Source: Macrostomum lignano (Eukaryota). Taken from it: a DNA stretch of 34,143 bases. Location: contig NIVC01004089.1 of assembly GCA_002269645.1 (NCBI GenBank), positions 1 to 34,143 of the forward strand. The letters run 5' to 3'. The first letter of the stretch is position 1. Every line of letters begins with the position of its first letter. This document shows, piece by piece, positions 1-30,529 of this stretch. The notes beneath the pieces were generated by a model. It ran no database searches. It was given only the letters and a program-made list of their open reading frames with translations, and was not told the DNA's origin. Made by a program: the position numbers and the translations under genes.

Positions 1-140
1 ATCTGACGACACCGTGGAGACAGGGCCTTGTAAGAGCGGTTTCCGCACCAGCATTCTTATCACTATCGCGCAACACCGAGGGACACTGCCAAAAGAATGT
101 GAAGAAGGTTACTAGCCCTGCAGATCGAAGAAAGCAACTG
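1..140 (+). CDS. Partial exon (module type A) of the Cys/Lys-rich repeat protein gene; frameshifted as written
   Basis: Frame 2 gives SDDTVETGPCKSGFRTSI; another frame gives RNTEGHCQKNVKKVTS. Both match module A (GPC..GFR.NI.Y...R..EG.C). About 3 missing bases are needed to restore the frame. GTGAGT donor at 141. Confidence 0.55.
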
Positions 141-214
141 GTGAGTTTCTGGTTTAGATTGGCTGCTGACAGTAGCAAACGAGTGTGATTTTGCTGCTCA
201 AAAACTCATTGCAG

Positions 215-385
215 AATGCCCTCCAAAGCGAGTGAAGAAGGTCGGAGGCTGCGAGGACCGGATCCAAAGGTGGCTCACAGTCTACTTCGAGTGGAACAAG
301 CTCAAGGGTCGGTGCGTGAAGAAGTTCAGAGCGAGAGAAAAACCGTGTAGAGAGGCTGCCTCAGGATCTACAGGAGCTGCAAAGA
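215..385 (+). CDS. Exon, module B (CPPKRVKKVGGC...RCVKKFRAREKPC)
   Basis: TTGCAG acceptor ends at 214; A|GTGAGT donor at 386; 171 nt, phase 1-1, open frame. Confidence 0.8.
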
Positions 386-486
386 GTGAGTAGACCAACT
401 AATTATCTCGAGCACGTACTGTACTTAGCCACAATTCCGGTACAACAGTCGAGCTACAATACTTCTCAATCTTCAATCGTTACCAG

Positions 487-828
487 GTAAAAAGTGTCCG
501 AAGCGACGAGTGATGGAGCCCGGACCGTGCATTGACGGATCCAGAAAGGTGCTCGTCGAGCATTATGAGTACAGTGAGAAGCGAGGTCGCTGTATCGCTC
601 ACAGAGACCTCATGCATCAGAAGTGCGGCGAGAAGGCCAAGAAGAAAAAGAAGAAGTCTACTCCCGGAGTCGACTTGAAGCACGAGTGTCCGGAGAAGAC
701 GGTCAATCAGGGAGCGTGTCGGAAGGGGGGCTACAGGACAGTGAACACAGTGTACTTTGTGTTTGTGAAGGCTCTGGGTCGATGTGTGAGGAAGGTCAAA
801 CAGGAGGACGAGAAGTGCGCCTTGCTGG
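487..828 (+). CDS. Exon, modules C1+C2 with poly-Lys linker
   Basis: ACCAG acceptor ends at 486; G|GTAAG donor at 829; 342 nt, phase 1-1; overlaps ORF 510..851. Confidence 0.85.
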
Positions 829-1289
829 GTAAGACATTAGCAATATTTTAATCAAAAAAAATTTTTCGATATGATTTTTTGATCCCCACTGTACCATGCA
901 GTACGAGTAATTCTATATTGTCTTGTATGTTGTTTTACCTTGCACTTAACGGTATTAGCTACTGCATTTAGCGCTTGTACTCTGCCTTTATGGCGAGACT
1001 GATATTTTCAGTCAGTCAGAAAGGCAGAAACTGCTGCAAAGACGTACTATAAATATTTTGATTGTCTCCGGATCTGTTCTTCTGTCTGAGTGTGGCACCA
1101 CACCAAGGCAGGATTTTTAAACACCTCAGGGACCAATTTCATGAAGCACTGCTAACTGTTACACTGTATTTCACAGCTGCTAGTGAACTTTTGGTTTTAT
1201 GAGTCTAGCTGTTGTAAACAGATTTTTACCAGCCTGCTAACTTTTGTCTTCACGAGCTAAAGTTTAGCATCCTTGATAGGCGACTAAGA

Positions 1290-1605
1290 ATGGAGATTCC
1301 ACTTTTCGACGCGCTTCAAGCAGCTGATCTCCCGGTCGATAGTCGTCTGCCGAGAGAGTTTAAAGATCGCATGAATTTCGCCGCCGCTGATGACTTTTAG
1401 CAGCGCTTCCGAATGAACCCAGAATTACGTTCAATTTCTGGCGGGGGTCTTTTGGCCCGAAGTTGGAATACGATGCGCCAAGAAGTAGAAGCTTGAGCGC
1501 ACGTGAGCAAACGCTGACCACTTTGCGATGCTACGCACCCATTAGTTTCTATCAGACGTACTCTGGGATGCAAATGGGCCTTCTGAATCGACAGTGACAA
1601 ATTTG
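1290..1605 (+). pseudogene. Degenerate PIF/Harbinger (HARBI1-like) transposase N-terminal fragment in intron
   Basis: Across one stop and two frameshifts it reads MEIPLFDA..RLPREFKDRMN...DDF*QRFRMNPEL / FNF....GPKL....RSRSLSAREQTLTTLRCYA...FY / GDANGPSESTV. This resembles the Harbinger N-terminal pattern F..RFRM...F..L...LS...QLL..LRYYA.G....GD..G.S.STV (recognised from memory). Confidence 0.6.
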
Positions 1606-2491
1606 AATTCGAAGTCACGAAATGCCGCTTCACTGGCCCAACGTCAGCGAGCTCCGAATATTTGAGCCTTCTCGCTTTAAAAGAGCCATATTCGCCCCCA
1701 CATACATGTAGATGTTTGCCTATGGCACAACCTGCTGTTAACTGGCTGGCTCTGCTAGTTAGCAGCTCAGACATGAAACCAAAGTTTCTCTCAACAGTCG
1801 GTTAGCAGCGTGAAGTGGGCCCAAAAGTGTATTTTTTGAAACAAATAGGTACGCTCGTAATGATTGCATTTTTTGCGCCCACCGTTACTACACTTATAGC
1901 GCTTCACTTACTTCATGTAATCTTAGTATGCGCAGCAGGGTTGAGGTCAGCATCCAATGAATTATTATCCGTTGCTCTGTTTAAAAGCTTAAAAGTTCGT
2001 GCACCTGCAATTTGTCGTTGGTCTTAACAGCTCTCGCCATGGCTTGAATAGCTTGTATGCATCAGGATCTAATGTACACGTACTTTGATCTTGATGTAGT
2101 GAAAGTTTTTGTGTACGCTCGTATAAACATAACGCAAAAATTTTAATACCCGAACGCATGGCGACAAATTGAGGGATAGCTACGATTTTCTACTAAACGC
2201 ATTCAAGCCTTTTTTTCTTAGAACAATGATTCGTCCACAAAAGGATATTTCATCTACATATTTAGGCCTGTAATTTTTTCATACATCATCATTGATTACG
2301 AGTATGTATCGAATTATAACGTTAAGCAGGGCTTTAACAACTACAAGTAGTTTACAATACTCACAGTAATGAAGTAAAAACTGAAATACGGATTTTTCGC
2401 AAAAGTCTGCTTCTTTGAGTGCAGGCGTTTACTTGTGAAGCTAAAAAGCAAATTTATATGATATAATATACACTTTATATTGAAAATTCAG

Positions 2492-2653
2492 TGAAAAACA
2501 AGAGCTGCCCAGCGGACGTCACTCAAGAAGTCGGACCCTGCGTGAACGGGTACCGCACTAACATCGTCTACACATTCAAGAGAGATCTGGAAGGTCGATG
2601 CGAGAAAAAGTCCAAGAAGATCACAATCACTTGCAGTGATGAGAAAGCCAAAG
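2492..2653 (+). CDS. Exon, module A (CPADVTQEVGPCVNGYRTNIVY...C)
   Basis: TTCAG acceptor ends at 2491; G|GTAAAT donor at 2654; 162 nt, phase 1-1. Confidence 0.8.
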
Positions 2654-2731
2654 GTAAATGCGAGAGTACGTATTTGCATTTTTCCAGGTAGTTCTGGATT
2701 AACAATGAATTGCCAATTTCGATAATTTCAG

Positions 2732-2902
2732 TCTGCCCTCCAAAGCGAGTGAAAAAGGTCGGAGGCTGCGAGGACCGGATCCAAAGGTGGCTCACAGTCT
2801 ACTTCGAGTGGAACAAGCTCAAGGGTCGGTGCGTGAAGAAGTTCAGAGCGAGAGAAAAACCGTGTGGAGAGGCTGCCTCAGGATCTACAGGAGCTGCAAA
2901 GA
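2732..2902 (+). CDS. Exon, module B (copy 2)
   Basis: TTTCAG acceptor ends at 2731; GTGAGT donor at 2903; 171 nt. Confidence 0.8.
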
Positions 2903-3003
2903 GTGAGTAGACCAACTAATTATCTCGAGCACGTACTGTACTTAGCCACAATTCCGGTACAACAGTCGAGCTACAATACTTCTCAATCTTCAATCGTCTC
3001 CAG

Positions 3004-3345
3004 GTAAAAAGTGCCCGAAGCGACGAGTGATGGAGCCCGGACCGTGCATTGACGGATCCAGAAAGGTGCTCGTCGAGCACTATGAGTACAGTGAGAAGCG
3101 AGGTCGCTGTATCGCTCACAGAGACTTCATGCATCAGAAGTGCGGCGAGAAGGCCAAGAAGAAAAAGAAGAAGTCTACTCCCGGAGTCGACCTGAAGCAC
3201 GAGTGTCCGGAGAAGACGGTCAACCAGGGCGCGTGTCGGAAGGGGGGCTACAGGACAGTGAGCACAGTGTACTTTGTGTTTGTGAAGGCTCTGGGTCGAT
3301 GTGTGAGGAAGGTCAAGCAGGAGGACGAGAAGTGCGCCTTGCTGG
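3004..3345 (+). CDS. Exon, modules C1+C2 (copy 2)
   Basis: CTCCAG acceptor ends at 3003; GTAAG donor at 3346; 342 nt. Confidence 0.85.
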
Positions 3346-3808
3346 GTAAGACATTAGCAATATTTTAATCAAAAAATAATTTTTCGATATGATTTTTTGA
3401 TCCCCACTGTACCATGCAGTACGAGTAATTCTATCTTGTCTTGTATGTTGTTTTACCTTGCACTTAATGGTATTAGCTACTGCATTTAACCGCTTGTACT
3501 CTACCTTTATGGCGAGACTGATATTTTCAGTCAGGCAGAAAGGCAGAAACTGCTGCAAAGACGTACTATAAATGTTTTGATTGTCTCCGGAACTGTTCTT
3601 CTGTCTGAGTGTGGCACCACACCAAGGCAGGATTTTTAAACACCTCAGGGACCAATTTCATGAAGCACTGCTAACTGTTACACTGTATTTCACAGCTGCT
3701 AGTGAACTTTTGGTTTTATGAGTCTAGCTGTTGTAAACAGATTTTTACCAGCCTGCTAACTTTTGTCTTCACGAGCTAAAGTTTAGCATCCTTGATAGGC
3801 GACTAAGA

Positions 3809-4124
3809 ATGGAGATTCCACTTTTCGACGCGCTTCAAGCAGCTGATCTCCCGGTCGATAGTCGTCTGCCGAGAGAGTTTAAAGATCGCATGAATTTCGC
3901 CGCCGCTGATGACTTTTAGCAGCGCTTCCGAATGAACCCAGAATTACGTTCAATTTCTGGCGGGGGTCTTTTGGCCCGAAGTTGGAATACGATGCGCCAA
4001 GAAGTAGAAGCTTGAGCGCACGTGAGCAAACGCTGACCACTTTGCGATGCTACGCACCCATTAGTTTCTATCAGACGTACTCTGGGATGCAAATGGGCCT
4101 TCTGAATCGACAGTGACAAATTTG
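3809..4124 (+). pseudogene. Second copy of the Harbinger-like transposase remnant (co-duplicated with the cassette)
   Basis: Near-identical to 1290-1605, with the same stop and frameshifts. Confidence 0.6.
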
Positions 4125-5015
4125 AATTCGAAGTCACGAAATGCCGCTTCACTGGCCCAACGTCAGCGAGCTCCGAATATTTGAGCCTTCTCGCTTTAAA
4201 AGAGCCATATTCGCCCCCACATACATGTAGATGTTTGCCTATGGCACAACCTTGCTGTTAACTGGCTGGCTCTGCTAGTTAGCAGCTCAGACATGAAACC
4301 AAAGTTTCTCTCAACAGTCGGTTAGCAGCGTGAAGTGGGCCCAAAAGTGTATTTTTTGAAACAAATAGGTACGCTCGTAATGATTGCATTTTTTGCGCCC
4401 ACCGTTACTACACTTATAGCGCTTCACTTACTTCATGTAATCTTAGTATGCGCAGCAGGGTTGAGGTCAGCATCCAATGAATTATTATCCGTTGCTCTGT
4501 TTAAAAGCTTAAAAGTTCGTGCACCTGCAATTTGTCGTTGGTCTTAACAGCTCTCGCCATGGCTTGAATAGCTTGTATGCATCAGGATCTAATGTACACG
4601 TACTTTGATCTTGATGTAGTGAAAGTTTTTGTGTACGCTCGTATAAACATAACGCAAAAATTTTAATACCCGAACGCATGGCGACAAATTGAGGGATAGC
4701 TACGATTTTCTACTAAACGCATTCAAGCCTTTTTTTCTTAGAACAACAATGATTCGTCCACAAAAGGATATTTCATCTACATATTTAGGCCTGTAATTTT
4801 TTCATACATCGTCATTGATTACGAGTATGTATCGAATTATGACGTTAAGCAGGGCTTTAACAAGTGCAAGTAGTTTACAATACTCACAGTAATGAAGTAA
4901 AAACTGAAATACGGATTTTTCGCCATAGTCTGCTTCTTTTAAGTGCAGGCGTTTACTTCTGAAGCTAAAAAGCAAAGTTATATGATATAATATACACTTT
5001 ATATTGAAAATTCAG

Positions 5016-5177
5016 TGAAAAACAAGAGCTGCCCAGCGGACGTCACTCAAGAAGTCGGACCCTGCGTGAACGGGTACCGCACTAACATCGTCTACACATT
5101 CAAGAGAGATCTGGAAGGTCGATGCGAGAAAAAGTCCAAGAAGATCACAATCACTTGCAGTGATGAGAAAGCCAAAG
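5016..5177 (+). CDS. Exon, module A (copy 2)
   Basis: TTCAG acceptor ends at 5015; GTAAAT donor at 5178; 162 nt. Confidence 0.8.
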
Positions 5178-5255
5178 GTAAATACGACAGTACGTGTTTG
5201 AATTTTTCCAGGTAGTTCTGGATTAACACTGAATTGCCCATTTCGATAATTTCAG

Positions 5256-5426
5256 TCTGCCCTCCAAAGCGAGTGAAGAAGGTCGGAGGCTGCGAGGACC
5301 GGATCCAAAGGTGGCTCACAGTCTATTTCGAGTGGAACAAGCTCAAGGGTCGGTGCGTGAAGAAGTTCAGAGCGAGAGAAAAACCGTGTAGAGAGGCTGC
5401 CTCAGGATCTACAGGAGCTGCAAAGA
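5256..5426 (+). CDS. Exon, module B (copy 3)
   Basis: TTTCAG acceptor ends at 5255; GTGAGT donor at 5427; 171 nt. Confidence 0.8.
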
Positions 5427-5527
5427 GTGAGTAGACCAACTAATTATCTCGAGCACGTACTGTACTTAGCCACAATTCCGGTACAACAGTCGAGCTACAA
5501 TACTTCTCAATCTTCAATCGTTACCAG

Positions 5528-5869
5528 GTAAAAAGTGTCCGAAGCGACGAGTGATGGAGCCCGGACCGTGCATTGACGGATCCAGAAAGGTGCTCGTCGA
5601 GCACTATGAGTACAGTGAGAAGCGAGGTCGCTGTATCGCTCACAGAGACTTCATGCATCAGAAGTGCGGCGAGAAGGCCAAGAAGAAAAAGAAGAAGTCT
5701 ACTCCCGGAGTCGACTTGAAGCACGAGTGTCCGGAGAAGACGGTCAATCAGGGCGCGTGTCGGAAGGGGGGCTACAGGACAGTGAGCACAGTGTACTTTG
5801 TGTTTGTGAAGGCTCTGGGTCGATGTGTGAGGAAGGTCAAACAGGAGGACGAGAAGTGCGCTCTCTTGG
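5528..5869 (+). CDS. Exon, modules C1+C2 (copy 3)
   Basis: ACCAG acceptor ends at 5527; G|GTGAGT donor at 5870; 342 nt. Confidence 0.85.
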
Positions 5870-5928
5870 GTGAGTTGTTGCTTCTTTAGAGCATGCTTCA
5901 TATTTGGGTGTGAGCGCTGGATTTAAGC

Positions 5929-6124
5929 TGTAGTCTGGCTTGTTGGTGCGCGTGCACTTAGATGTGCACGTCTGGCTGGTTTGGGGGTTGGGGTTTAGCG
6001 CTGCGGCGTGTGCGTGCTTAGGGTGGTTACACCCACCCCAACTTTGGCAATAAATATATTGGCGTGAGCCAGTGAGGTCTCCTCACGTTTTGTTATTCTC
6101 TGCAATTCAACCCACGGTCTTACA
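5929..6124 (+). repeat. 5' LTR (196 bp)
   Basis: TGTAGTCTGG...GGTCTTACA; identical by eye to 11067-11262; contains AATAAA. Confidence 0.96.
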
Positions 6125-6125
6125 C

Positions 6126-6138
6126 TGGTGGCAGCGGT
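6126..6138 (+). promoter_or_regulatory. Primer-binding site complementary to the tRNA-Leu 3' end
   Basis: TGGTGGCAGCGGT, 1 nt after the LTR; its reverse complement ACCGCTGCCA-CCA matches the 3' end of eukaryotic tRNA-Leu (AAG/TAG type). Confidence 0.85.
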
Positions 6139-6144
6139 CTCAGT

Positions 6145-7326
6145 ATGGCCAAATCAGAGCAAGCCAGTTTATTGCCTCCAAAGTTCAGCGGCGACTCCAA
6201 CGTGAGAATGTGGCTAAGCACGTTTGAGGACTTCGCCGACGACTGCGAATGGGACGACAAGAAGAAGGCAAAGAAGCTGAGACTGCTGGTGACAGGAGAA
6301 GCGCAAATCTTCGTCTGGGAGCAGCCGGCAGACGTGTCAGCCAGCTATGAAAGGCTGAAGGAGAAGCTGATCGAGTGCTTCGGCAACAGTCTGAGCTGCT
6401 ACAGAGCAATGGAGGAGTTTGAAGAGCGAAAGCGACAGCCCAACGAGTCGCTGAGGGAGCTCGCCTACAGCCTGAAGCTTCTCCACCTTCGGGCCCGCCC
6501 GGACGACTCCGTGGCGGCTCGGGAAAAGGACGTGAAGTTTCGTCTGATGCGCCTCCTGCCATCTGCCGTGAGAGATGCGCTGTTGAAGGACCAGGACGCG
6601 GACTCGTGTTCGCTGGCCGCCATCGTCGACAGAGCTGCGCAGCTTGAGCTGGTGAGCCACGCAACTACAGCCTCATCAGCCGCGGTGTCGGTAGAAGACA
6701 GACGGCTGAGCCAGCTGGAGCAGCAGATGCAGCAGCTGACAGCCGGGGTGGCACGAGACCAGCGTCCACGTCGCGCCCCTGGACACCCCGCCAATGTGGC
6801 AGGAGCTCCGTGCGTCCCTGCCATCGACGGGGTGACGAATTGGTCTCACCTCCGGGTATGCAGCCTGGGAGAGCTGTCCCCCAACGTTGGGTTGGCGGTG
6901 GATGGCGGTTTTTACAGCGTAAGTCGGTCTGCGGAGGAGCCCTGCGCACCGGGACTCGGGTCCCCACGCTCTCTGGCCACCCGCCGCAGGCCGCAAATTG
7001 GATTCCGCCGTCTACTGCCCGCCCGCGCAGGGTCAGCGCCCCGGCTGCATGGGGCTACGCCCCCGGTCCTATTAGCTACGTCTAGCTACAATGTCCGTGA
7101 CCCGAAAAAGAAAGAAAGAAAGCTGACAGCCAGCGTGCGAACGGGACCACCCGGAAGAGACAGGCGTCAGAAGGGACCCATTAGGTGCTTCAGCTGCGGC
7201 GAGCCGGGTCACATTGCTAGGCGGTGCCCAAAGGCGATCGGCAGCCGCTGCAGCCGGTGCTCAGGCAAGGGTCACTCCGCCGCGGTGTGCCCGACACCAA
7301 CTGGTCAGCCGCAGGGAAACTTCTGA
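6145..7326 (+). CDS. gag: Gag with two CCHC zinc knuckles, carrying a 129-codon in-frame insertion
   Basis: PPKFSGD..V..WL..FE capsid-like start; CFSCGEPGHIARRC and CSRCSGKGHSAAVC knuckles. Confidence 0.9.
   Translation: MAKSEQASLLPPKFSGDSNVRMWLSTFEDFADDCEWDDKKKAKKLRLLVTGEAQIFVWEQPADVSASYERLKEKLIECFGNSLSCYRAMEEFEERKRQPNESLRELAYSLKLLHLRARPDDSVAAREKDVKFRLMRLLPSAVRDALLKDQDADSCSLAAIVDRAAQLELVSHATTASSAAVSVEDRRLSQLEQQMQQLTAGVARDQRPRRAPGHPANVAGAPCVPAIDGVTNWSHLRVCSLGELSPNVGLAVDGGFYSVSRSAEEPCAPGLGSPRSLATRRRPQIGFRRLLPARAGSAPRLHGATPPVLLATSSYNVRDPKKKERKLTASVRTGPPGRDRRQKGPIRCFSCGEPGHIARRCPKAIGSRCSRCSGKGHSAAVCPTPTGQPQGNF
6745..6847 (+). ncRNA. HDV-like self-cleaving ribozyme (predicted fold)
   Basis: P1 GGGGU(G) 6745-6750 / (C)GCCCC 6774-6779; P2 GAGACCA 6755-6761 / UGGUCUC 6841-6847; P3 GCG/CGC around L3 UCCACGU 6765-6771; P1.1 CC 6766-6767 / GG 6781-6782; P4 CACCCCG 6784-6790 / CGGGGUG 6828-6834 plus UGGCAGG 6797-6803 / CCUGCCA 6817-6823; J4/2 ACGAAU with putative catalytic C6836. 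Confidence 0.8.
6745..7120 (+). mobile_element. Short non-autonomous non-LTR retroposon (SINE-like) nested in gag
   Basis: Flanked by the direct repeat AGCTGACAGCC (6734-6744 and 7121-7131); 3' tail GAAAAAGAAAGAAAGAA (7104-7120). Removing insert plus one TSD restores ..QQLTA|SVRTGPP.. of gag. Confidence 0.85.
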
Positions 7327-7372
7327 GGGTCGGCAGCCTGGGGCCAGCACCGACCCGCTCAAAAGGGGCCCT
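7314..7372 (+). promoter_or_regulatory. Programmed -1 ribosomal frameshift signal (slippery heptamer plus stem/pseudoknot)
   Basis: G GGA AAC (7314-7320) in the gag frame; 6-nt spacer; GGGTCGG 7327-7333 / CCGACCC 7350-7356 stem; pol is in the -1 frame. Confidence 0.85.
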
Positions 7373-10300
7373 CAGATCAGCGCCTTCAGTCTTCGTGAAG
7401 GTGCACTTTGGCAGCGTGTCAGCGCCTGCTCTGCTCGACACCGGCGCGCAAGTTTCGTTGATGGACAAGTCGCTGTTCGACAGACTGCAGTGCAAGATCG
7501 ACTCCACCGACATCGGTGCGCTGCCGACGGCTGTCGACGGATCCCGGCTGCGCTGCCTTGGCCTGTCAGCAGCGGATGTTTCGATCGGCCAGACCATCCG
7601 CGTGCGCCATCGCTTCACAGTCGTGGACGGCATCCAGCCCAGCCTGATCATCGGCATGGACTTCATTGGCGAGGTGTCGCAGGCGATGACCATTGACATT
7701 AAAGAAGGCGTCGTCAGGTTCGACGGCACAGCTGTGCCTTTCAGCAGCGAGCCGGCTCGAGCAGATTGTCGCCTGGTGCCGAGTGTCCTGGTGGCGCGTG
7801 TGGCGGCAACTACGGAGCTGCCCGCCCGCAGCGAGAAGCTGGTGTGGCTCAAGGTGGATTCCAGCGGCGAGCAGGGAGTCTTTGAGCCGTCTGAGGACTT
7901 CGTGAAGTCCACTGCCGTCCTGCCGGGCCGCGTGCTGGCGGTCTCGGACGACTGCCGCATCCCGGTGAAAATGTGCAACCTTGCAGAGGAGCCCGTGCTG
8001 CTGTACGCCAACAAGGCGGTCGGCACGTTCGAAGGCGCGATGACAGACGGGGACAGTCGCCAGGAGGCGGCCCAGGAGAACCCCGTCGGTTGGAACATCA
8101 ACGCGGAGCTGCCCGAACCGGATGCTGCGAGGCTGCGACAGCTGTTGGAGAGCAACGAGGACCTGTTCGCCAGGCACGAGTACGACCTGGGCACGACGGC
8201 GTTGCTGCAGCACCAAATCGAGCTGGAGCCGGGAGCGCGGCCACACCGGCAGGTCCAGCGCCGGCTGCCGCTGTCTGTGCGAGACCAGGTGGACAAGAAG
8301 ATCGGTCAGATGCTGGAAAGCGGCATCATCGAACCGTCGACATCGCCATGGGCCAGCAACCTGCTGGTGGTCCGCAAGAAGAACGGCGACATCAGACTGT
8401 GCACGGACTGGCGGCAGCTCAACGCCTGCACGGTCAAGGATGCATACCCGCTGCCGCACCTGCAGCAGGCCATGGATGCGCTTGTCGGATGCTCCTGGTT
8501 CTCCACCATCGACTGCCGGCAGGGCTACCACCAGGTGGAGGTGGCGGAGGAGGACCGGTACAAGACGGCTTTCTATTCGACGCGCGGCCTGATGCAATTC
8601 TGCAAGATGGGCTTCGGGATGTGCAATGCCCCGGCGACGTTCCAGCGGCTCATGGAGCTGGTGATGTCCGGCCTGTCCTGGGAGTCCGTGCTGACTTATA
8701 TCGACGACATCATTGTCTTCAGCAGGACGTTCGACGAGCACTTAGAGAGGCTGGCGGAAGTTTTTAAGCGGCTGCGAGACGCGGGACTCAAGCTGCACAA
8801 GGCCAAGAGCGCGTTCGGCCATCGCCGGGTGCTGTACCTGGGACACCTGATCAGCGAGCAGGGCATCGCACCGGATCCCGGCAAGGTCGAGGCCATTCGC
8901 AGCATGCCCAGCCCAACGACGAACGAGGAGGTGAAGCGGTTTCTTGGAATGCTGGGTTTCTACCGCCGGTTCATCCGAGGCTTCAGCCAGACGGCGAGGG
9001 TCCTGCACGACGTCAGCGTGAAATCGAGGGACTTCGCGTGGAGCAGCGACTGCGAGCGAGCGTTCCGCGAGTTGAAGGACCGGCTGACGACAGCTCCGGT
9101 GCTGAGACTGCCAGATTTCACCAAGCAGTTTGTGCTCAGCTGCGACAGCAGTCAGTTCGCCGTCGGCGCGGTGCTCAGCCAGCTGCACGGTGACGCCGAG
9201 CTGCCTGTGGCGTTCGCCTCTCGCACCCTCAACAAGGCCGAGCGCAACTACTCGGCGACCGACCGCGAGCTGCTGGCGCTTGTCTGGAGTTTGAAGCACT
9301 TCAGGACGTACCTGCTGAGTGTTCCGAGCTTCAGAGTCTACTCGGACCACCGGCCACTGCAAGGTCTGCTGGCAACGAAGGACCCCGAAGGTCGGCTGGC
9401 GCGATGGCTTTCTACGCTGCAGCAGTTTTCGTTCGAGCTGCTGTACCGGCCTGGCATGGACAACGTCGTGCCGGATGCGCTGAGCCGGGTGGCCGGCACG
9501 CGCCTGCAGCCTCGGTGGGACGACAGCCGCCTGCACGAGGAGCAACTGCAAGATCCGCTGCTGAGCAAGGCGTTCCAGGCGCTGACCGAAGGGATTGACA
9601 GCCTGTCCGATTCATGGGCGGCGCAGGTTCGCGAGCTGCTGGACGAGGCCTCGGTGAGCTCGGCGGGAGTCCTGCTGGTCGGTGGCCGGCCAGTCATTCC
9701 CGGTCACCTGCGGCCACATTTCCTGCAGCAGGCGCACTCGTGTGACCAGAGCGGACACCTCGGCGTCGACAAGACCGGAGCGAGATTGTCTGAGCGCTGC
9801 TGGTGGCCTGGTCTGCGACGGGACGTCGAGAACTGGGTGGCCAGCTGTGCGGTCTGCCTGGCCAAGAAGAGTCCAACCAAGCCGCAGAAGGCGCCGCTAC
9901 AGTCGACGTGCCAGCCGACGGCTCCGTGGCGGCTGGTGCAGATCGACATCAAAGGGCCGCTTCCGCGTACGACTGATGGCAAAGCGTACATCCTGAGCAT
10001 GTGCGACGCCTTCTCCAAGTGGATGGAGACGGCAGCCCTGGCGGCAATCGACGCGGTTACGGTGGCGGATGCGCTGCTCAAGTCGGTGGTTCTGCGTCAC
10101 GGCGCTCCTCAGGTGCTGCACAGTGACCAGGGACGGCAATTCGAGAGCGAGGTGTTCGGCCGGCTCTGCGAGAAGCTGGGCGTCGAAAAGACGCGCACGT
10201 CGCCGTTTCATCCGAGCGGCAACGGAATCGTCGAGCGAGGCAACCGGACGCTCGGCGATATGCTGGCGACGACGGTGGCCGAGAACCAGCAGGATTGGGA

Positions 10301-11030
10301 CAGCAAGCTGCCATATGTGACCTGGGCCTACAACACCTCCGTGCACAGCACCATCGGCCTCAGTCCGTACCAGGTCCTCCACGGCTGGCCACCGAGGCTG
10401 GATCTCGACAGCTGGCTGATAAGCGGCGACCGGCCGGCAGCCGACGGTGGACATCACGGCTTCCTGCGGCGGACTCAGGAGAACCTGCAGAGCGCCTTCG
10501 ACACGGTGCACGGCCGACTGCGGAGCGCCCAGGCCGAGCGCAACCGGCTGGCCAACCAGGACTCTCGGTTTGTGCCGTTCGAAGAGGGCCAGCTCGTGAT
10601 GCTGCGCAACTCCGTCGTCAAGCGCGGCCAGACGCGGTGTTTGAGCGCCAAGTGGAAGGGGCCGTACCGAGTCCTGAGGCGCCTGGGCGAGGTCAATTAC
10701 CGCATCCAGGACGAGACCGGCCGCAGGCGCCGGCTGGTGGTGCACCACGACCGCCTCAAGTGCTTCGTGCAGCGGCGGGCGTCACTGGAGCTTCCGGCCG
10801 CAGCAGACCACCAGCCGCCGGCCGCCGACTTCGACAACGACGACACCGTCGCTGAGCCGCCCGGGCAGGCGACCGATCCTGGCGGCGACGCGGTGACCTT
10901 CTGGCCCGAGCTGCAGGCAGACGAGGCACCCGAGGAGCAGCCGGCGGCACCGGCCGAGCCGGTCACGGTTCCGCGGCGGTCGGCGAGAGAGCGGCGGCCA
11001 CCTGACTTGTACATGGCGGGCTTTGCTTGA
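7314..11030 (+). CDS. pol: Pol polyprotein: protease, RT, RNase H, integrase (open ORF 7224-11030; translation probably enters via the frameshift at ~7320)
   Basis: ALLDTGAQVS (protease); YIDDII (RT); CDSS..AVGAVL, ELLA, SDH, DALSR (RNase H); H..SGHLG..C..C, DIKGP, HSDQG, ERGNRTL (integrase); WKGPYRV (GPY/F). No stops. Confidence 0.95.
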   Translation, partial: GKLLRVGSLGPAPTRSKGALRSAPSVFVKVHFGSVSAPALLDTGAQVSLMDKSLFDRLQCKIDSTDIGALPTAVDGSRLRCLGLSAADVSIGQTIRVRHRFTVVDGIQPSLIIGMDFIGEVSQAMTIDIKEGVVRFDGTAVPFSSEPARADCRLVPSVLVARVAATTELPARSEKLVWLKVDSSGEQGVFEPSEDFVKSTAVLPGRVLAVSDDCRIPVKMCNLAEEPVLLYANKAVGTFEGAMTDGDSRQEAAQENPVGWNINAELPEPDAARLRQLLESNEDLFARHEYDLGTTALLQHQIELEPGARPHRQVQRRLPLSVRDQVDKKIGQMLESGIIEPSTSPWASNLLVVRKKNGDIRLCTDWRQLNACTVKDAYPLPHLQQAMDALVGCSWFSTIDCRQGYHQVEVAEEDRYKTAFYSTRGLMQFCKMGFGMCNAPATFQRLMELVMSGLSWESVLTYIDDIIVFSRTFDEHLERLAEVFKRLRDAGLKLHKAKSAFGHRRVLYLGHLISEQGIAPDPGKVEAIRSMPSPTTNEEVKRFLGMLGFYRRFIRGFSQTARVLHDVSVKSRDFAWSSDCERAFRELKDRLTTAPVLRLPDFTKQFVLSCDSSQFAVGAVLSQLHGDAELPVAFASRTLNKAERNYSATDRELLALVWSLKHFRTYLLSVPSFRVYSDHRPLQGLLATKDPEGRLARWLSTLQQFSFELLYRPGMDNVVPDALSRVAGTRLQPRWDDSRLHEEQLQDPLLSKAFQALTEGIDSLSDSWAAQVRELLDEASVSSAGVLLVGGRPVIPGHLRPHFLQQAHSCDQSGHLGVDKTGARLSERCWWPGLRRDVENWVASCAVCLAKKSPTKPQKAPLQSTCQPTAPWRLVQIDIKGPLPRTTDGKAYILSMCDAFSKWMETAALAAIDAVTVADALLKSVVLRHGAPQVLHSDQGRQFESEVFGRLCEKLGVEKTRTSPFHPSGNGIVERGNRTLGDMLATTVAENQQDWDSKLPYVTWAYNTSVHSTIGLSPYQVLHGWPPRLDLDSWLISGDRPAADGGHHGFLRRTQENLQSAFDTVHGRLRSAQAERNRLANQDSRFVPFEEGQLVMLRNSVVKRGQTRCLSAKWKGPYRVLRRLGEVNYRIQDETGRRRRLVVHHDRLKCFVQRRASLELPAAADHQPPAADFDNDDTVAEPPGQATDPGGDAVTFWPELQADEAPEEQPAAPAEPVTVPRRSARERRPPDLYMAGFA

Positions 11031-11053
11031 CTCTGGAACTGTCTTTTGCTTCT

Positions 11054-11063
11054 AGGGGGAAAG
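11054..11063 (+). promoter_or_regulatory. Polypurine tract
   Basis: AGGGGGAAAG ending 3 nt before the 3' LTR. Confidence 0.8.
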
Positions 11064-11066
11064 TAG

Positions 11067-11262
11067 TGTAGTCTGGCTTGTTGGTGCGCGTGCACTTAGA
11101 TGTGCACGTCTGGCTGGTTTGGGGGTTGGGGTTTAGCGCTGCGGCGTGTGCGTGCTTAGGGTGGTTACACCCACCCCAACTTTGGCAATAAATATATTGG
11201 CGTGAGCCAGTGAGGTCTCCTCACGTTTTGTTATTCTCTGCAATTCAACCCACGGTCTTACA
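11067..11262 (+). repeat. 3' LTR (196 bp)
   Basis: Identical by eye to the 5' LTR; followed by the AAGC TSD. Confidence 0.96.
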
Positions 11263-11294
11263 AAGCCAATAATTCGAGCATTCTTGCTTTCTAG

Positions 11295-13473: not shown

Positions 13474-16400
13474 CAATCTGTTATGCGTTTAAATTACAAT
13501 AGGTTAAGTGTATCTGTGTATTCGATAAGGGCCGTAACTTAGTCTTCGATTGGGGGGGGGAGGGGGTGGGCAGGAGTGCCAGTGAAGGGCCGGAACCACT
13601 TTTGACCATAGACAACGCAATCTGGGCTTTCTAATTTGGCGAACAGCGCCTATTTTAGCAATTCTGTGTACAGATAGAAAAGGTAATAACTTTCCCAAGA
13701 TCATTTGCTGACCATGCTGGTTGTTGTTTTAAGGGTCATACCATTAGATAAATGTACACTACATGTGCATGTACGTTTGTGCGTTTATTTTTAATATGTA
13801 ACTGCATTACGTAATGTTTTGCAGTACTTGTACTGCATAATGCTCTGCATAATATAAAAATGCATGTATTAAAGAGCTACTAAATGGAACTCGAAATGCT
13901 CCAGCATACGCTCGTTGAATGCAAAATTTAAAATTATTTTGCTAAAAATACACCTACACAGTTAGAATTAACGAACGTAGTTCTCAAGAAGCACTGGGTG
14001 GCATGCAGTATGGCATAGAATTCCATATCTAATAATTGTTCATAACTTACTCCGAAGTATAGCGTCGTGCTTGAGAATGCAATTAAGCACTTAATCCACA
14101 GGTTCGTTAGCTTATTGAATCAATTTTGTTATTAAATAATAAGACAATAATCAATATCAAACGACCCCAAATCTTGAAAGAATGCGTAGCTGAATTTTCT
14201 AAATTAGCAAGCAGCTTAACCAGCGCTGACGGCAATTCTGGCCATTCCGCTGACAGCTCCTGAGCACATACAAGCGCGCCAATACTGCACGCAGGTACGC
14301 ACTCGTTCATGCGCTCATGCACATAGGGTGTACAGCTGCCCTGGCTTTCTAATCATCAGGGATGATGTACACTTTCTGTGCCTTGAGGGTTGGCTAATTT
14401 TTAGAGCACAAAAGCCACATACAAATGTGGTCGCTAATGGGGCGGAATCGAACCATGCAGCACCTGGGGTCGTGGCAGATGAGTCAGACGTGGGAGTCAG
14501 GAGGGCTACAAGGCGATTCCCAACTTTGAGACGTTGAGACACTGCCTTGAGAGTCAGGATAGAAATGCATAAAATCAGCGGCGCTCACACTTGAGCAGTG
14601 CAGTTGGAGGAGTAGAATCTCATCATCGCGATTGACACAGAAAGCAGTGGTCGATAATTACATATGCGACCCATGCACGTCAAAAATTGGATGCTTGACG
14701 AGATACAACTCTCTCCACTAAACTGCCAAGTTGTTTTTCAATCTATGAAGTTCTCTGATATTGCTTCAGTTAAGACGCTTTAGATAGAATGTTGAGGTTT
14801 TGTTCAGCCATTAAAGGCTCTTGGCAATAGACTATTGATGACCGAATCCTCTCTAGTTTGGATCGATAATAAAAGCAGCTATAATAGCTATGGCGCGAGT
14901 AGGCCAGGCTTTGACTTTTATAAATTAAAACTGCTTTCAACGTTTCTTAACGACACTGAAAACGCAAGCAATTTATTCGTTGCATTCATTGAACATGCAA
15001 GAGGCCGTACTCACCGAACTCATGCAGACTGATAGGGGAAGATAAGAAATCATTGGGCTAGCTAGTAGCTAGCTAGTCGTGCCCTATGGGGAGTCGGGGA
15101 TCGCACACAAGCTGTGTTGTGCTTGGGGGTTGGGTTGGGGTGTCGTAAAGGTAAGACGAATTCTGCTGTACCGAGCAAAACTCGAAGCTCAAGCAAGCAG
15201 GCAGGCTTCTTTAAACCACAAGGAAGGAACTATAATCAGCGTGTGCACGTGGCTTTTGTCAAAGTTGGTGACTAAATAAATAAACCAAGTTAAATAGAGA
15301 TATAAGATAAGGAATAGTATTCTGTGGAATCAACTTAACACCACCTTAGTATCGAGGCAAAATCTTGACAGTCATGGATAACCTGATAAGCTGTTCGAAG
15401 TTCGATAAATTACACATATTTAATTCGAACCAGGGGAAGTTGGTTAAGAATAAGTTGTCTGACTAGCTAAGATCAGGGACGTCAGAGCGAAGCGATAGCT
15501 ATAAAATTTATTGCCAAAGTTGAGTACCAATCGTGCTAAATCCCGAGGCAGTATGGACAGGACAAGTACACAGAGTCAATTTCATTAGCTAAAACTCTTA
15601 GTAGCTTTGTATGTACAATAAGAAGCCTAAGATTTGTTTTTTTGGTTGTAATTTTAATGCGTTTAATTTGTAACGCAATAGAAACGACACCGAACGATTA
15701 TTAGGGACTGACTTTTTAATTCGTAATGACAAGTTAGGGGGGGGGGGGGGTTGAAAAACATTTGGACATAGCTCGTATATTGACTTTCATTTACAACAAC
15801 TAAGGATTGTGACCCTAGAGTGGGCTTGCTCTTGCTCTTGTGGGGGAGAGGGTCGTTTTTACGCCCTGACTGGCACAACTAACCCCCTAAACTTACTGCA
15901 ATTAAAGTACAGTGTCGCTATTTAACTATCATGTGTATGTACAGCTCGAGCTCAGGTTTTACGAAGCCCGTGTAATGTACTTATTATAGCTTGACTTCAT
16001 GGTGGGCTGGATGGCATTGGACAATTAAAGGCTCATTTCACACTGCCATTCAAACGACACCAAATCACACGGCCAATAAGTACAAAGAAATCAAATTTGA
16101 TGTACAAATTTTGTGATGACACGAAATTAGGTCTTACTAGCAATCTAGTGCCCCCTTTCGGGGCGGCCAATAAGCAAGGGACGAATCCTTTAAAATGAAA
16201 GGAATTCTTAGGAACAGAATTCTCATTTTCAAAATGTTCAAAATGTTTCGTTTCCATAGAATAAATAATTATATAGTAAAATATGTTTTAAATCGACTGT
16301 TTTAAAGCTGAAATTACATGTAAACGTTGTTTTTAAAAGTACAGTTCTTAAATTCCTCAGCAACGCTCTTTTACAATATTATTAAACAAATTTTGGAGCA

Positions 16401-17835: not shown

Positions 17836-18209
17836 ATTTTCTCTCATGAAGCATGTAGACTGTGTGGAGCGAGAAATAGTTCCGATATCCTACACTACTT
17901 GACCGAATGTCCACAAACTGAAAAGATCAGAAAAAATACTTCTGTCAGTACCTCTTAAATGACAAGCAAGTACACAAGATAGGATATGCTACAAATGAAA
18001 AAAGAGTCAGAAAAGAGCTCACTGGTGTAGCTAAAATATATGATGTCATGAATAGTTAAAACAGTTCTGCAAACTGAAACAGATATATCAGCAGTGTAAT
18101 AAATCCGCTTTTCAGTTGTTTATTCATTGAAACAGATATATCAGCAGTGTAATAAATCCGCTTTTCAGTTGTTTATTCATTTACTGTCTTTTTAATTTCC
18201 TATTTAATT
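17836..18209 (+). mobile_element. 3'-end fragment of the adjacent LINE (zinc-knuckle coding region plus 3' UTR) placed directly upstream of it
   Basis: Matches 21851-22174 with scattered substitutions; contains an extra 53-bp tandem duplication (18075-18127 and 18128-18180). Confidence 0.9.
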
Positions 18210-22174: not shown

Positions 22175-22394
22175 AGCATTTAATTAATATTTAATTAGTT
22201 TCCTATCTAATACCTGTTTAAATCGTCGCTATTCGTTTAACGTAAATTTCTTTCGAAGTTCGTTTTTGTTCATTTTTCGTTCGTTTTTCACGCTTTGAAA
22301 TATTGCGCGCTTGCAAAATACTATATCTTTTTACAAAAAACGCTCTTTCAAATACCTTAATAATTTTACAAATATCGTAACTCGCATCGTAACT

Positions 22395-29721: not shown

Positions 29722-30403
29722 ATGTCTGCTTACATTGACGCTAGTCAGACTGCCTCAATCACTGACAATGAAGAAGTTGATCACGTCGACCTGCAGGACG
29801 ATGCGCAGGTGACCACCGCTGATGGCTCAACCATAGACAACTCATCTGGCAGTCAGCCAACAATCAGCAAATCCGAAGCTCTGATCTCAATTGCTGTACT
29901 GTGCTGCATTAATTTGCTCAACTATATGGACAGATTCACCGTAGCAGCAGTACTCGATCGAATCGAAAAAGATTACAAAATAGACAATAGTGAAGCTGGA
30001 TTATTGCAGACTTCATTTATTGTATCCTACATGCTGCTTAGTCCGTTATTTGGCTACTTGGGCGATCGCGGCAGTCCTGGCAGTCTGTGGAGCCGCAAGA
30101 CCATCATGATTGGCGGTGTGCTCGCCTGGTCTGCGGTCACTTTGGCCAGTTCGTTCGTGCCTAAGAACCAGTTCGGCCTGTTCCTGCTAACCCGTTGCCT
30201 AGTTGGCATTGGCGAAGCCTCTTATATTACGGTGTCAACACCTATTGTGGCCGATTTGTTTGTGGGCGACGCTCGCACCGTGGCATTGATTGTGTTCAAT
30301 CTGCAGGTACCCCTGGGCAGCGGTCTGGGCTACGTGGTTGGCGGCCAGGTGGCTCAGGCAGCCGATAGCTGGAGATCAGCGCTACGGGTCACGCCAGGTC
30401 TTG
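29722..30403 (+). CDS. spns: Spinster-family MFS transporter, coding exon 1
   Basis: LLNYMDRFTVAAVL, LQTSFIVSYMLLSPLFGYLGDR, R.LVGIGEASY, GSGLGY, ALRVTPGL motifs; G|GTGAGT donor at 30404. Confidence 0.9.
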
Positions 30404-30529
30404 GTGAGTTTCAAGTTTTAGGATTGTTGTTTTGCTGTTCAAGAGGATTGAGGTTGTTAAAGGGCTTATTATCCTGCTGCTGGATCTCTGTAATAGTATC
30501 TGGATCCTCAGATAGATTATCTCGGTATA

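What the first reader, a model, noticed from the sequence alone, without database searches (positions are those of the whole stretch)
6734..7131. HDV-like ribozyme-headed retroposon nested in frame inside a Gypsy gag
Seen in sequence: a 376-bp insert with an 11-bp TSD (AGCTGACAGCC) and a (GAAA)n tail, no ORF of its own, and no Pol III A/B box that I can find. Its first ~103 nt satisfy every element of the HDV double pseudoknot (P1, P1.1, P2, P3, L3=UCCACGU, long P4, J4/2=ACGAAU). Established: RTE- and R2-type non-LTR elements use 5' HDV-like ribozymes to free their RNA from host transcripts, and short non-autonomous derivatives exist. Inference: this is a ribozyme-processed, promoterless SINE-like family mobilised by a LINE. 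It may be a bipartite RTE derivative, since SYNVR just before the tail weakly resembles the APE start motif.
Basis: partly seen in the sequence, partly recalled or inferred. Interest (0 to 1): 0.9.

Follow-up and report, generated by a model that had tools for sequence, protein, structure and literature searches.

The report
Ribozyme-headed short retroposon inside Gypsy gag
A 376-bp non-coding retroposon that begins with a hepatitis-delta-like self-cleaving ribozyme fold and ends in a (GAAA)n tail has recently jumped into the gag gene of a young Gypsy element, probably in the flatworm Macrostomum; it is a well-preserved new example of a kind of mobile element that is already known.

Summary
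Window 6745-7120 is a 376-bp insert flanked by a perfect 11-bp target-site duplication. It ends in G(A)5(GAAA)2GAA. Eight... seven related Gag proteins and one related DNA contig have the uninterrupted site.

The insert's first 103 nt thread onto the HDV-like nested double pseudoknot. P2 is 7 bp, P3 is 3 bp, P1.1 is 2 bp and P4 is a long hairpin. L3 is UCCACGU and J4/2 is ACGAAU, with the putative catalytic C at 6836. A structure-only descriptor is not significant in this window. Structure plus the conserved L3 and J4/2 letters occurred in 0 of 1000 shuffles. The fold also starts exactly at the first inserted base.

Weak points: P1 has only 5 bp, or 6 if it takes a base from P3. The G·U pair at the cleavage site is missing in this copy. 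Rfam scores it far below threshold. Cleavage is untested.

A second, near-identical copy sits inside a Macrostomum lignano gene model. A metagenome contig carries a retroposon with the same core, a covarying P2, a 3' hairpin and a (GAAA)n tail.

Best reading: a promoterless, ribozyme-processed, LINE-dependent non-autonomous retroposon, like R2 SIDEs or NARTc. The LINE partner is unidentified and the 'SYNVR/RTE' idea is unsupported. It is a new member of a known kind.

The parts
5929..11262 (+). Host element: an intact-looking Ty3/Gypsy LTR retrotransposon. The LTRs are 5929-6124 and 11067-11262. The 4-bp target-site duplication AAGC lies at 5925-5928 and 11263-11266. The gag ORF is 6145-7326 and the pol ORF is 7224-11030, in the -1 frame.
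   Evidence: The LTR pair is 196 nt at 100% identity (D9). The ends TG...CA and the flanks were read. Pfam finds zf-CCHC in Gag and protease, RT, RNase H and integrase, in that order, in Pol.
6734..6744 (+). Left copy of the 11-bp target-site duplication AGCTGACAGCC.
   Evidence: A single copy is present at the homologous site of L001.
6745..7120 (+). The 376-bp non-autonomous retroposon. It is in the sense orientation relative to the Gypsy and is 65% G+C.
   Evidence: It is absent from seven Gag homologues. The whole-element fold has z = -4.4.
6745..6847 (+). HDV-like ribozyme fold, a nested double pseudoknot. The predicted cleavage site is immediately 5' of G6745.
   Evidence: Helices were checked pair by pair. 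It is the only descriptor hit on this strand. No shuffle out of 1000 combined the structure with the conserved letters. There is a weak CPEB3_ribozyme match covering P3-L3-P1'.
6745..6749 (+). P1 5' strand, GGGGU. It pairs with GCCCC at 6775-6779. G6750 could add a sixth pair with C6774 at the expense of P3.
6755..6761 (+). P2 5' strand, GAGACCA. It pairs with UGGUCUC at 6841-6847, giving 7 Watson-Crick pairs.
   Evidence: Direct reading. A 7-mer complement within 150 nt arises in 1.3% of shuffles. P2 also appears in the centroid fold of the whole element.
6762..6774 (+). P3 (GCG/CGC) enclosing L3 (UCCACGU). C6766 and C6767 pair with G6781 and G6782 to form P1.1.
   Evidence: This stretch is 12 of 13 identical to the CPEB3 ribozyme consensus GCGUUCACGUCGC printed.
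6775..6782 (+). P1 3' strand GCCCC, then unpaired U6780 (J1/4), then GG of P1.1.
6783..6835 (+). P4, a long imperfect hairpin.
   Evidence: The fold energy is -29.4 kcal/mol with z = -4.15, and 0 of 200 shuffles fold as well.
6835..6840 (+). J4/2, ACGAAU. C6836 is the putative catalytic cytosine.
   Evidence: CGAAU matches the CPEB3 consensus.
6841..6847 (+). P2 3' strand, UGGUCUC.
6857..7052 (+). Body of the element: a 196-nt rod-like hairpin.
   Evidence: The energy is -112.6 kcal/mol with z = -5.2 on the + strand, against z = -2.8 for the complement. This indicates an RNA-level, G·U-containing structure on the sense strand.
7073..7088 (+). 3' hairpin UAGCUA-CGUC-UAGCUA (6-bp stem, 4-nt loop), 15 nt upstream of the tail. 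It is a candidate recognition site for the partner reverse transcriptase.
   Evidence: An equivalent 6-bp/4-nt hairpin lies 11 nt before the (GAAA)n tail of the related element in L005.
7104..7120 (+). Simple-repeat tail, G(A)5 GAAA GAAA GAA.
   Evidence: It is the only (GAAA)n run of 3 or more units in the window.
7121..7131 (+). Right copy of the 11-bp target-site duplication.

Best explanation
Window 6745-7120 is one copy of a short, non-coding, promoterless non-LTR retroposon. Its 5' end is an HDV-like self-cleaving ribozyme.

Proposed life cycle:
- Shown by sequence: a copy has no Pol III head and no ORF.
- Inferred: the copy is therefore transcribed only as part of a host transcript. Here that would be the sense transcript driven by the Gypsy 5' LTR.
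- Inferred: the ribozyme folds and cuts immediately 5' of its own first G, which frees an RNA whose 5' end is the first base of the element.
- Inferred: the reverse transcriptase/endonuclease of an autonomous LINE recognises the 3' module, a 6-bp hairpin plus a (GAAA)n tail.
- Shown by sequence: the RNA was copied into a staggered nick by target-primed reverse transcription. This left the 11-bp duplication and a 5' boundary that coincides with the predicted cleavage site.

The insertion is recent. The duplication is perfect and the host LTRs are identical. It most likely followed integration of this Gypsy copy.

Consequences for the Gypsy are inferred. Gag gains 129 foreign residues between its capsid-like part and the zinc knuckle. 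If the ribozyme is active, the Gypsy genomic RNA would also be cut.

This particular copy may be impaired for cleavage, because it appears to lack one 5' G that would close P1 with a G·U pair.

The partner LINE is unknown. An RTE-like element is the best guess, because RTEs combine 5' HDV-like ribozymes, a lack of promoter and simple-repeat tails.
For: Insertion by target-primed reverse transcription:
- There is a perfect 11-bp duplication and a simple-repeat tail.
- The empty site is seen in seven Gag homologues and in contig L001.

Ribozyme:
- All helices are present in the HDV order.
- P4 is exceptionally stable, with z = -4.15.
- The P3-L3-P3' stretch is 12 of 13 identical to the CPEB3 ribozyme consensus, and J4/2 is CGAAU as in CPEB3.
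- Structure plus these conserved letters occurs in 0 of 1000 shuffles.
- The fold starts at the first inserted base. The background rate of structure-only hits is about 2.7e-5 per position (derived).

Family:
- UniRef100_A0A1I8HT69 of Macrostomum lignano contains the element in two frames. Stretches of 21 and 50 residues are identical to the window's translation, and the match starts at the same 5' end.
- Metagenome contig L005 carries a roughly 978-bp element with a 27-of-28-nt identical core.
- Its P2 arms, GUGACA/UGUCAC, differ from the window's by four double compensatory changes. The chance of such a complement is 0.03.
- L005 also has a hairpin inserted in J1/2, a 3' 6-bp hairpin, a (GAAA)15A10 tail and a degenerate 13-14-bp duplication.

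No Pol III head.

Literature:
- Ribozyme-headed non-autonomous elements are known (PMC3414825, PMC3383444, PMC4035085).
- RTE and Baggins elements are promoterless and ribozyme-processed (PMC6765202).
- RTE 3' ends consist of simple repeats (PMC2887409).
- Natural R2 ribozymes have P1 of 6-7 bp, with one deviating example of 4 nt, and J1/4 of 0-2 nt (PMC3774820).
Against: - No Rfam family reaches its gathering score. The best is CPEB3_ribozyme at 15.3 bits against 35, with E = 0.34 on 551 nt.
- P1 is 5 bp with an unpaired U6780, so the G·U pair at the cleavage site is missing in this copy.
- The structure-only descriptor also hits two chance loci in the window.
- Only one further copy of the family and one distant relative could be seen. 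The relative's J4/2 (CAUAUUG) lacks CGAA, and its 5' end is 2 nt shorter, so it does not confirm the catalytic core.
- No autonomous LINE sharing the 5' or 3' end was found.
- Nothing defines the 3' end of an RNA transcribed from inside the Gypsy.
- Self-cleavage has not been tested.
Confidence: 0.75

Rival explanations
1. This is a retro-copy of a host transcript rather than a dedicated mobile family. A cellular RNA that happens to be processed by an HDV-like ribozyme was occasionally captured by a LINE reverse transcriptase, in the manner of a processed pseudogene.
For: Only two copies were seen (window; P0008). The element has no promoter or ORF.
Against: The tail is (GAAA)n, not poly(A). 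A 3' hairpin-plus-(GAAA)n module and the same ribozyme core recur in an otherwise unrelated element, with its own target-site duplication, in another sample (L005). This points to a shared retrotransposition module rather than a gene.
Confidence: 0.1
2. This is an ordinary dead-on-arrival LINE fragment or internally deleted LINE. Its 5' ribozyme-like fold is a coincidence or a decayed relic that plays no part in making the RNA.
For: A relaxed structural descriptor gives about 1.8 chance hits per window. Rfam is below threshold. P1 is short.
Against: No shuffle out of 1000 combined the structure with the L3 and J4/2 letters. The fold starts at the first inserted base. The M. lignano copy starts at the same base, so the 5' end is not a random truncation point. 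P2 covaries in L005. No LINE coding similarity appears in any frame.
Confidence: 0.08
3. This is a retro-copy of a small rod-like, ribozyme-bearing RNA. That would be an HDV-ribozyme analogue of the hammerhead 'retrozymes', or a viroid- or delta-like circular RNA, whose linear monomer starts at the cleavage site.
For: The element is 376 nt. It has a 196-nt rod-like hairpin body with z = -5.2 and a sense-strand preference, and a 5' HDV-like ribozyme.
Against: It is a single copy, not a tandem, so this locus cannot release a circle. It has a typical LINE-type 3' tail and an 11-bp duplication. No second ribozyme lies on either strand. The related L005 element is 978 bp and shares neither the body nor the rod.
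Confidence: 0.04

Closest known systems
R2 SIDEs and R2/R1 hybrid SIDEs of Drosophila (Eickbush & Eickbush 2012, PMC3414825)
   Same: They are short non-coding non-LTR derivatives made of a 5' HDV-like ribozyme joined to a 3' end that a LINE reverse transcriptase recognises. They are propagated by target-primed reverse transcription, and the hybrids make 14-bp duplications.
   Different: SIDEs are demonstrably internal deletions of known R2 or R1 elements and insert only in rDNA. Here no parent LINE is known, the target is an ordinary coding sequence, and the tail is a (GAAA)n repeat.
NARTc, SIDER and RIME elements with the L1TcRz/Pr77 ribozyme in trypanosomatids (PMC3185411, PMC3383444, PMC4035085)
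   Same: They are dispersed non-autonomous partners of an APE-type LINE, and their first roughly 77 nt form an HDV-like ribozyme that sets the RNA 5' end.
   Different: Pr77 is also an internal promoter. The tails are poly(A), and there is no sequence similarity. Here the P4 is long and the core is CPEB3-like.
RTE and Baggins LINEs with 5' HDV-like ribozymes (Ruminski et al. 2011, as summarised in PMC6765202); RTE simple-repeat tails (PMC2887409)
   Same: They are promoterless elements co-transcribed from host or LTR-element transcripts and released by a 5' HDV-like ribozyme. Their 3' ends consist of simple repeats, and they have APE-type duplications.
   Different: Those elements are autonomous, with a single APE-RT ORF. 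This element has no detectable coding remnant, so descent from an RTE is a guess.
Mammalian CPEB3 ribozyme (Rfam RF00622)
   Same: It has the same fold. P3-L3-P3' is 12 of 13 identical and J4/2 is CGAAU in both.
   Different: CPEB3 is a single-copy intronic ribozyme with a 7-bp P1, a weak P1.1 and an 18-nt P4. This one has a 5-6-bp P1, a 2-bp G-C P1.1 and a 53-nt P4, and it heads a mobile element. The score is well below the family threshold, so it is not a member of RF00622.
Perere-3 (RTE) of Schistosoma mansoni with 5' twister-variant ribozymes (PMC8501958)
   Same: It is a flatworm APE-type non-LTR element that uses a 5' self-cleaving ribozyme and inserts with duplications at non-specific sites.
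   Different: The ribozyme class differs (twister rather than HDV-like), and the element is autonomous.

Membership tests
HDV-like self-cleaving ribozymes | Nested double pseudoknot with strands in the order P1-P2-P3-L3-P3'-P1'-(P1.1)-P4-J4/2-P2' | tested here: met
   All helices are present in the right order (and as a descriptor hit). P2 is 7 bp, P3 is 3 bp, P1.1 is 2 bp and P4 is stable.
HDV-like self-cleaving ribozymes | P1 of about 6-7 bp closed by a G·U (or G-C) pair at the cleavage site, directly followed by P1.1 | tested here: inconclusive
   There are 5 bp, or 6 by borrowing C6774 from P3, and U6780 is unpaired. This lies within reported natural variation, where J1/4 is 0-2 nt and one R2 ribozyme has a 4-nt P1 (PMC3774820). 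In the M. lignano copy the base before the element must be G, because the preceding codon is Arg and so ends in GG. That G would restore a G·U pair, but it could equally be flanking DNA.
HDV-like self-cleaving ribozymes | Conserved core letters: a catalytic C at the start of J4/2, U and G in L3, and C residues in L3 for P1.1 | tested here: met
   L3 is UCCACGU and J4/2 is ACGAAU. No shuffle out of 1000 gives the structure together with these letters.
HDV-like self-cleaving ribozymes | Match to a curated Rfam model at its gathering score | tested here: not met
   There are no hits at gathering scores. CPEB3_ribozyme scores 15.3 bits against 35. The model cannot score the pseudoknot helix P2 and expects an 18-nt P4.
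HDV-like self-cleaving ribozymes | Site-specific, Mg2+-dependent self-cleavage | not testable with these tools
   This needs in-vitro transcription with a C6836U control.
Non-LTR (target-primed) retroposon | Target-site duplication, an A-rich or simple-repeat 3' tail, and a precise empty site | tested here: met
Non-LTR (target-primed) retroposon | Dispersed multi-copy family | tested here: inconclusive
   One further copy lies in a M. lignano gene model. One related element lies in L005. No host genome was available to count copies.
Classical SINE (Pol III-transcribed) | A head derived from tRNA, 5S, 7SL or snRNA with internal A and B boxes | tested here: not met
   No A or B box lies within 6745-7120 even at 1 mismatch. 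ARAGORN finds no tRNA. Rfam finds no small-RNA match at E up to 10.
SIDE (internally deleted LINE) | The 5' and 3' ends are identical to those of an autonomous LINE in the same genome | not testable with these tools
   No host genome is available. The only LINE in the window (18475-21973) shares nothing with the insert.
RTE-clade derivative | Residual similarity to the RTE APE/RT ORF or its 3' end | tested here: not met
   Pfam finds only zf-CCHC in the Gag-insert fusion frame. Six-frame and single-frame protein searches return only P0008. The simple-repeat tail is compatible with an RTE but is not specific to it (PMC2887409).

The most novel reading that the evidence does not exclude
The element is not a mere SINE analogue but an HDV-ribozyme counterpart of the hammerhead 'retrozymes'. 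It would be a small, highly structured, rod-like RNA of about 376 nt that exists as an abundant, possibly circular, RNA species in Macrostomum and is retro-copied by a LINE. Alternatively, sense-oriented copies inside LTR elements could serve as master genes that borrow LTR promoters while cutting the LTR element's genomic RNA.
Probability: 0.05. Interest if true: 0.8.

Novelty: new member of a known kind. Interest (0 to 1): 0.4.

Why it matters
The copy is unusually clean. It has a perfect duplication, an empty-site control and a young host element, and its 5' boundary equals a predicted ribozyme cleavage site. That makes it a good natural illustration of how promoterless retroposons obtain defined RNA 5' ends.

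The library searches used here found no paper linking Macrostomum to self-cleaving ribozymes, apart from one incidental co-mention. If the ribozyme is active, this would therefore add Macrostomum to the hosts of HDV-like-ribozyme retroposons, alongside the twister-headed RTEs of schistosomes. The library does mention a planarian R2 ribozyme.

It would also give a compact three-part module (ribozyme, rod, hairpin plus (GAAA)n) for finding the partner LINE. The core is almost letter-for-letter that of the mammalian CPEB3 ribozyme, which bears on the idea that cellular HDV-like ribozymes descend from retroelements.

None of this changes current concepts.

Tried and rejected
- Rfam at gathering thresholds over the whole window gave nothing.
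- The permissive Rfam scan gave only a sub-threshold CPEB3 match.
- A structure-only HDV descriptor was rejected as evidence on its own, because it yields about 1.8 chance loci per window.
- No other copies exist in the window.
- A six-frame concatenated translation of the insert, searched against 5.8 billion proteins, returned only P0008.
- A full phmmer search of frame +2 against 1.84 billion representatives returned only P0008 plus one spurious hit.
- A six-frame translation of the L005 element returned nothing.
- An exact look-up of the Gag-insert ORF and of P0008 in the assemblies found no record.
- The metagenome scan with the 21-nt core gave 6 contigs. Five are chance matches in contigs of 60-73% G+C, probably bacterial, without any further similarity.
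- The viral-contig scan gave 0 hits.
- The window's own LINE (18475-21973) was rejected as a partner. It has no shared sequence, no (GAAA)n, no HDV-like hit and no Rfam ribozyme.
- A MAFFT alignment of the two ribozymes mis-registers the P2 3' arm by one column. I therefore did not run pair counting on it, and the covariation is read directly from the sequences.
- A DNA transposon or MITE was rejected: there are no terminal inverted repeats.
- An intron was rejected: there are no GT...AG ends, and the segment is flanked by a duplication.
- The papers by Ruminski et al. 2011 and Webb et al. 2009 are not held in the library.
Full report
**Observation**

- AGCTGACAGCC occurs at 6734-6744 and again at 7121-7131.
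- The 376 bp between the two copies (6745-7120) are 65% G+C and end in GAAAAAGAAAGAAAGAA.
- A7121 can be assigned to either the tail or the duplication.

**Host element**

The insert lies in the gag gene of a complete-looking Ty3/Gypsy element at 5929-11262.
- The two 196-bp LTRs (5929-6124 and 11067-11262) are 100% identical. They begin with TG and end with CA.
- They are flanked by a 4-bp duplication, AAGC.
- Gag (6145-7326) carries a CCHC zinc knuckle.
- Pol (7224-11030, in the -1 frame) has protease, RT, RNase H and integrase in Gypsy order.
- The element is 60-68% G+C in a 30-48% G+C background.
- Insert plus one duplication copy is 387 nt, or 129 codons. One frame is open, so the gag ORF reads through. 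Given the composition, I regard this as chance: roughly 1 in 3 for the length, times a moderate chance that the frame is open.

**Empty site**

A search with the Gag ORF returned seven homologues, P0001-P0007, at 39-77% local identity.
- P0001 is 264 residues long, which is exactly 393 minus 129.
- In the alignment all seven lack the 129 residues and read ...QQ|LTA.V... without interruption.
- The Logan contig that encodes P0001 (L001) aligns to both flanks at 85-89% identity, and the two alignments overlap by 11 bases. It therefore has a single copy of the target, AGCTGACTGCC.

The segment is thus a genuine insertion with a target-site duplication, not part of the ancestral gag.

**Ribozyme anatomy**

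The numbering below counts from 6745 as position 1 (the P2 coordinates are corrected by direct reading).

| Element | Positions (element) | Sequence | Note |
|---|---|---|---|
| P1 | 1-5 with 31-35 | GGGGU / GCCCC | G6 could also pair with C30 |
| J1/2 | 6-10 | | |
| P2 | 11-17 with 97-103 | GAGACCA / UGGUCUC | 7 Watson-Crick pairs |
| P3 | 18-20 with 28-30 | GCG / CGC | |
| L3 | 21-27 | UCCACGU | |
| J1/4 | 36 | U | unpaired |
| P1.1 | 22-23 with 37-38 | CC / GG | |
| P4 | 39-91 | | -29.4 kcal/mol, z = -4.15, 0 of 200 shuffles as stable |

This is the strand order of the HDV-like nested double pseudoknot.

Rfam gives nothing at gathering scores. A permissive scan gives only CPEB3_ribozyme at 15.3 bits (gathering score 35; E = 0.34 on 551 nt). 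That alignment shows why the score is low. The model has no P2 and expects an 18-nt P4, so it mis-places the 3' part. It also shows that P3-L3-P3' (GCGUCCACGUCGC) is 12 of 13 identical to the CPEB3 consensus, and that CGAAU is shared.

**Is the fold more than chance?**

I wrote a relaxed structural descriptor with these limits: P1 of 5-7 bp, J1/2 of 0-6 nt, P2 of 5-9 bp, P3 of 3 bp, L3 of 7-8 nt, P1.1 of 2 bp, a P4 stem of at least 4 bp, and J4/2 of 4-6 nt containing a C.
- It finds this locus and two others in the window.
- It finds a mean of 1.83 loci in 1000 dinucleotide shuffles done separately for the Gypsy and its flanks. Structure alone therefore proves nothing.
- Only this locus also has the L3 consensus UYCNCGY and CGAA in J4/2. 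The L3 consensus occurred in 0 of 1000 shuffles, CGAA in 29 of 1000, and both together in 0 of 1000.
- Independently, the hit begins exactly at the first base of the duplication-defined insert. At a background of about 2.7e-5 structural hits per position, that coincidence is itself very unlikely.

I conclude that the fold is real and that its cleavage site defines the element's 5' end.

**Weak points of the ribozyme in this copy**

- P1 has 5 pairs, or 6 at the expense of P3.
- U36 has no partner, so the closing G·U pair is absent.
- Published R2 ribozymes have P1 of 6-7 bp and J1/4 of 0-2 nt, with one 4-nt P1 noted as deviating from most (PMC3774820). This copy is therefore at the edge of natural variation, not outside it.
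- The second copy (below) is preceded by a G that would complete a G·U pair. The family may therefore start with five Gs, and this copy may have lost one at the 5' junction. This is an inference from one codon.

**The rest of the element**

- Positions 6857-7052 fold into a 196-nt rod-like hairpin. The energy is -112.6 kcal/mol, with z = -5.2 on the sense strand and -2.8 on the complement. The whole element has z = -4.4.
- A small hairpin, UAGCUA-CGUC-UAGCUA (7073-7088), lies 15 nt before the tail.
- No frame has a homologue other than the second copy.
- There is no A or B box, tRNA, 5S or 7SL similarity.
- There are no terminal inverted repeats.

**Other copies**

A six-frame concatenated translation of the insert found one protein, P0008. 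This is UniRef100_A0A1I8HT69, a WD-repeat gene model of Macrostomum lignano.
- Its residues ...QR|GWHETSVHVAPLDTPPMWQEL-PWESCP-QRWVGGGW...STARPRR|KQQ... reproduce frames +1 and +2 of the insert, with identical stretches of 21 and 50 residues.
- The match starts at the same first bases as the window's element.
- It differs by one C in a C-run.
- It skips two pieces bounded by GT...AG, which look like model 'introns' placed around stop codons.

This is a second, independent, nearly identical copy. It suggests that the window comes from M. lignano or a close relative.

Five are chance matches in contigs of 60-73% G+C. The sixth, L005 (47% G+C), carries on its minus strand (1363 to 386) a roughly 978-bp element with these features:
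- The same 27-of-28-nt core.
- P2 arms GUGACA/UGUCAC at the expected places. Relative to the window's P2 there are four double compensatory changes. Such a 6-mer complement arises in 3% of shuffles.
- A 40-nt hairpin inserted in J1/2.
- A 5' end GGTGGCG that matches positions 3-8 of the window element.
- A 6-bp/4-nt hairpin 11 nt before (GAAA)15A10.
- Flanks GAC-CCCCATCCCC and GACTCCCCGTCCCC, which look like an old duplication.

The body of the L005 element is unrelated. Its J4/2 (CAUAUUG) lacks CGAA, so it supports the architecture and P2 but not the catalytic core. It also gives a sub-threshold CPEB3 match.

**Mechanism**

The most likely mechanism is that of the known ribozyme-processed non-LTR elements.
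- The element has no promoter and is co-transcribed with its surroundings.
- The ribozyme then releases an RNA that starts at the element's first base.
- A LINE enzyme that recognises the 3' hairpin and repeat tail copies this RNA into a staggered nick.

The steps shown by sequence are the insertion signature, the absence of a promoter-type head and of an ORF, and the coincidence of the cleavage site with the 5' end. Cleavage itself, the source of transcription and the partner enzyme are inferred.

In this locus the element is in the sense orientation behind an intact LTR, so the Gypsy could supply transcription. Conversely, an active ribozyme would sever the Gypsy genomic RNA, which argues that the insertion followed integration of this Gypsy copy.

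**Comparison with known systems**

The closest known relatives are:
- R2 SIDEs and R2/R1 hybrid SIDEs (PMC3414825).
- NARTc, SIDER and RIME elements with L1TcRz (PMC3185411, PMC3383444, PMC4035085).
- The promoterless, ribozyme-headed RTE and Baggins elements summarised in PMC6765202. That review also notes hundreds of intergenic HDV-like ribozymes with conserved downstream and variable upstream sequence.

RTE 3' ends consist of simple repeats (PMC2887409), so an RTE partner is plausible but untested. Flatworm RTEs of schistosomes use twister variants instead (PMC8501958).

There is no endonuclease signal in Pfam, no LINE protein hit in any frame, and the motif lies next to the tail.

**Novelty and interest**

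The kind is known. This is a new and very clean member in a host for which the literature searches found no work on self-cleaving ribozymes. Its core is strikingly CPEB3-like and its body is an unusual rod. I rate the interest as moderate (0.4).

The most novel reading not excluded is an HDV-ribozyme analogue of retrozymes, or a rod-like circular RNA copied into DNA. Its probability is low, because the locus is a single copy with a LINE-type tail and duplication.

**Dead ends**

These are listed under Tried and rejected. The main limitation is that no host genome could be searched, so copy number, the consensus 5' end and the partner LINE remain open.

Noticed in passing
window 1-5548: A unit of about 2.52 kb is repeated head-to-tail roughly 2.2 times at 95-100% identity (families D3-D8 and D15). 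Its nature was not examined.
   Followed up: no
window 17836-22320: There is an AT-rich APE+RT non-LTR element whose coding region (18475-21973) is broken into three ORFs. The same ~340-bp 3'-end sequence both precedes it (17836-18181) and ends it (21851-22184). A 5'-UTR-like sequence recurs after it (18249-18293 resembles 22274-22318). It therefore looks like a head-to-tail tandem of LINE copies. It has no (GAAA)n tail, no HDV-like descriptor hit and no Rfam ribozyme.
   Followed up: partly
window 29722-32703: Two ORFs (29722-30561 and 31723-32703) match the N- and C-terminal halves of an MFS/OATP-type transporter. A 21-bp minisatellite array of about 1.2 kb (30530-31741) separates them and is presumably intronic.
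   Followed up: no
window 33374-33762: A 163-bp unit is repeated 2.4 times in tandem at 94% identity.
   Followed up: no
window 14444-14454 (-): A perfect Pol III B-box consensus, GGTTCGATTCC, is present without a tRNA gene call from ARAGORN. It may be a tRNA-derived SINE or a decayed tRNA.
   Followed up: no
P0008 (UniRef100_A0A1I8HT69, Macrostomum lignano): A public WD-repeat gene model has about 80 residues translated from a copy of this retroposon. It is stitched across two frames by a 1-nt difference and two GT...AG 'introns' that avoid stop codons. This is a likely annotation artefact, or possibly an exonisation.
   Followed up: partly
window 6857-7052: The body of the retroposon is a 196-nt rod-like hairpin. 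It is much more stable on the sense strand (z = -5.2) than on the complement (z = -2.8).
   Followed up: partly
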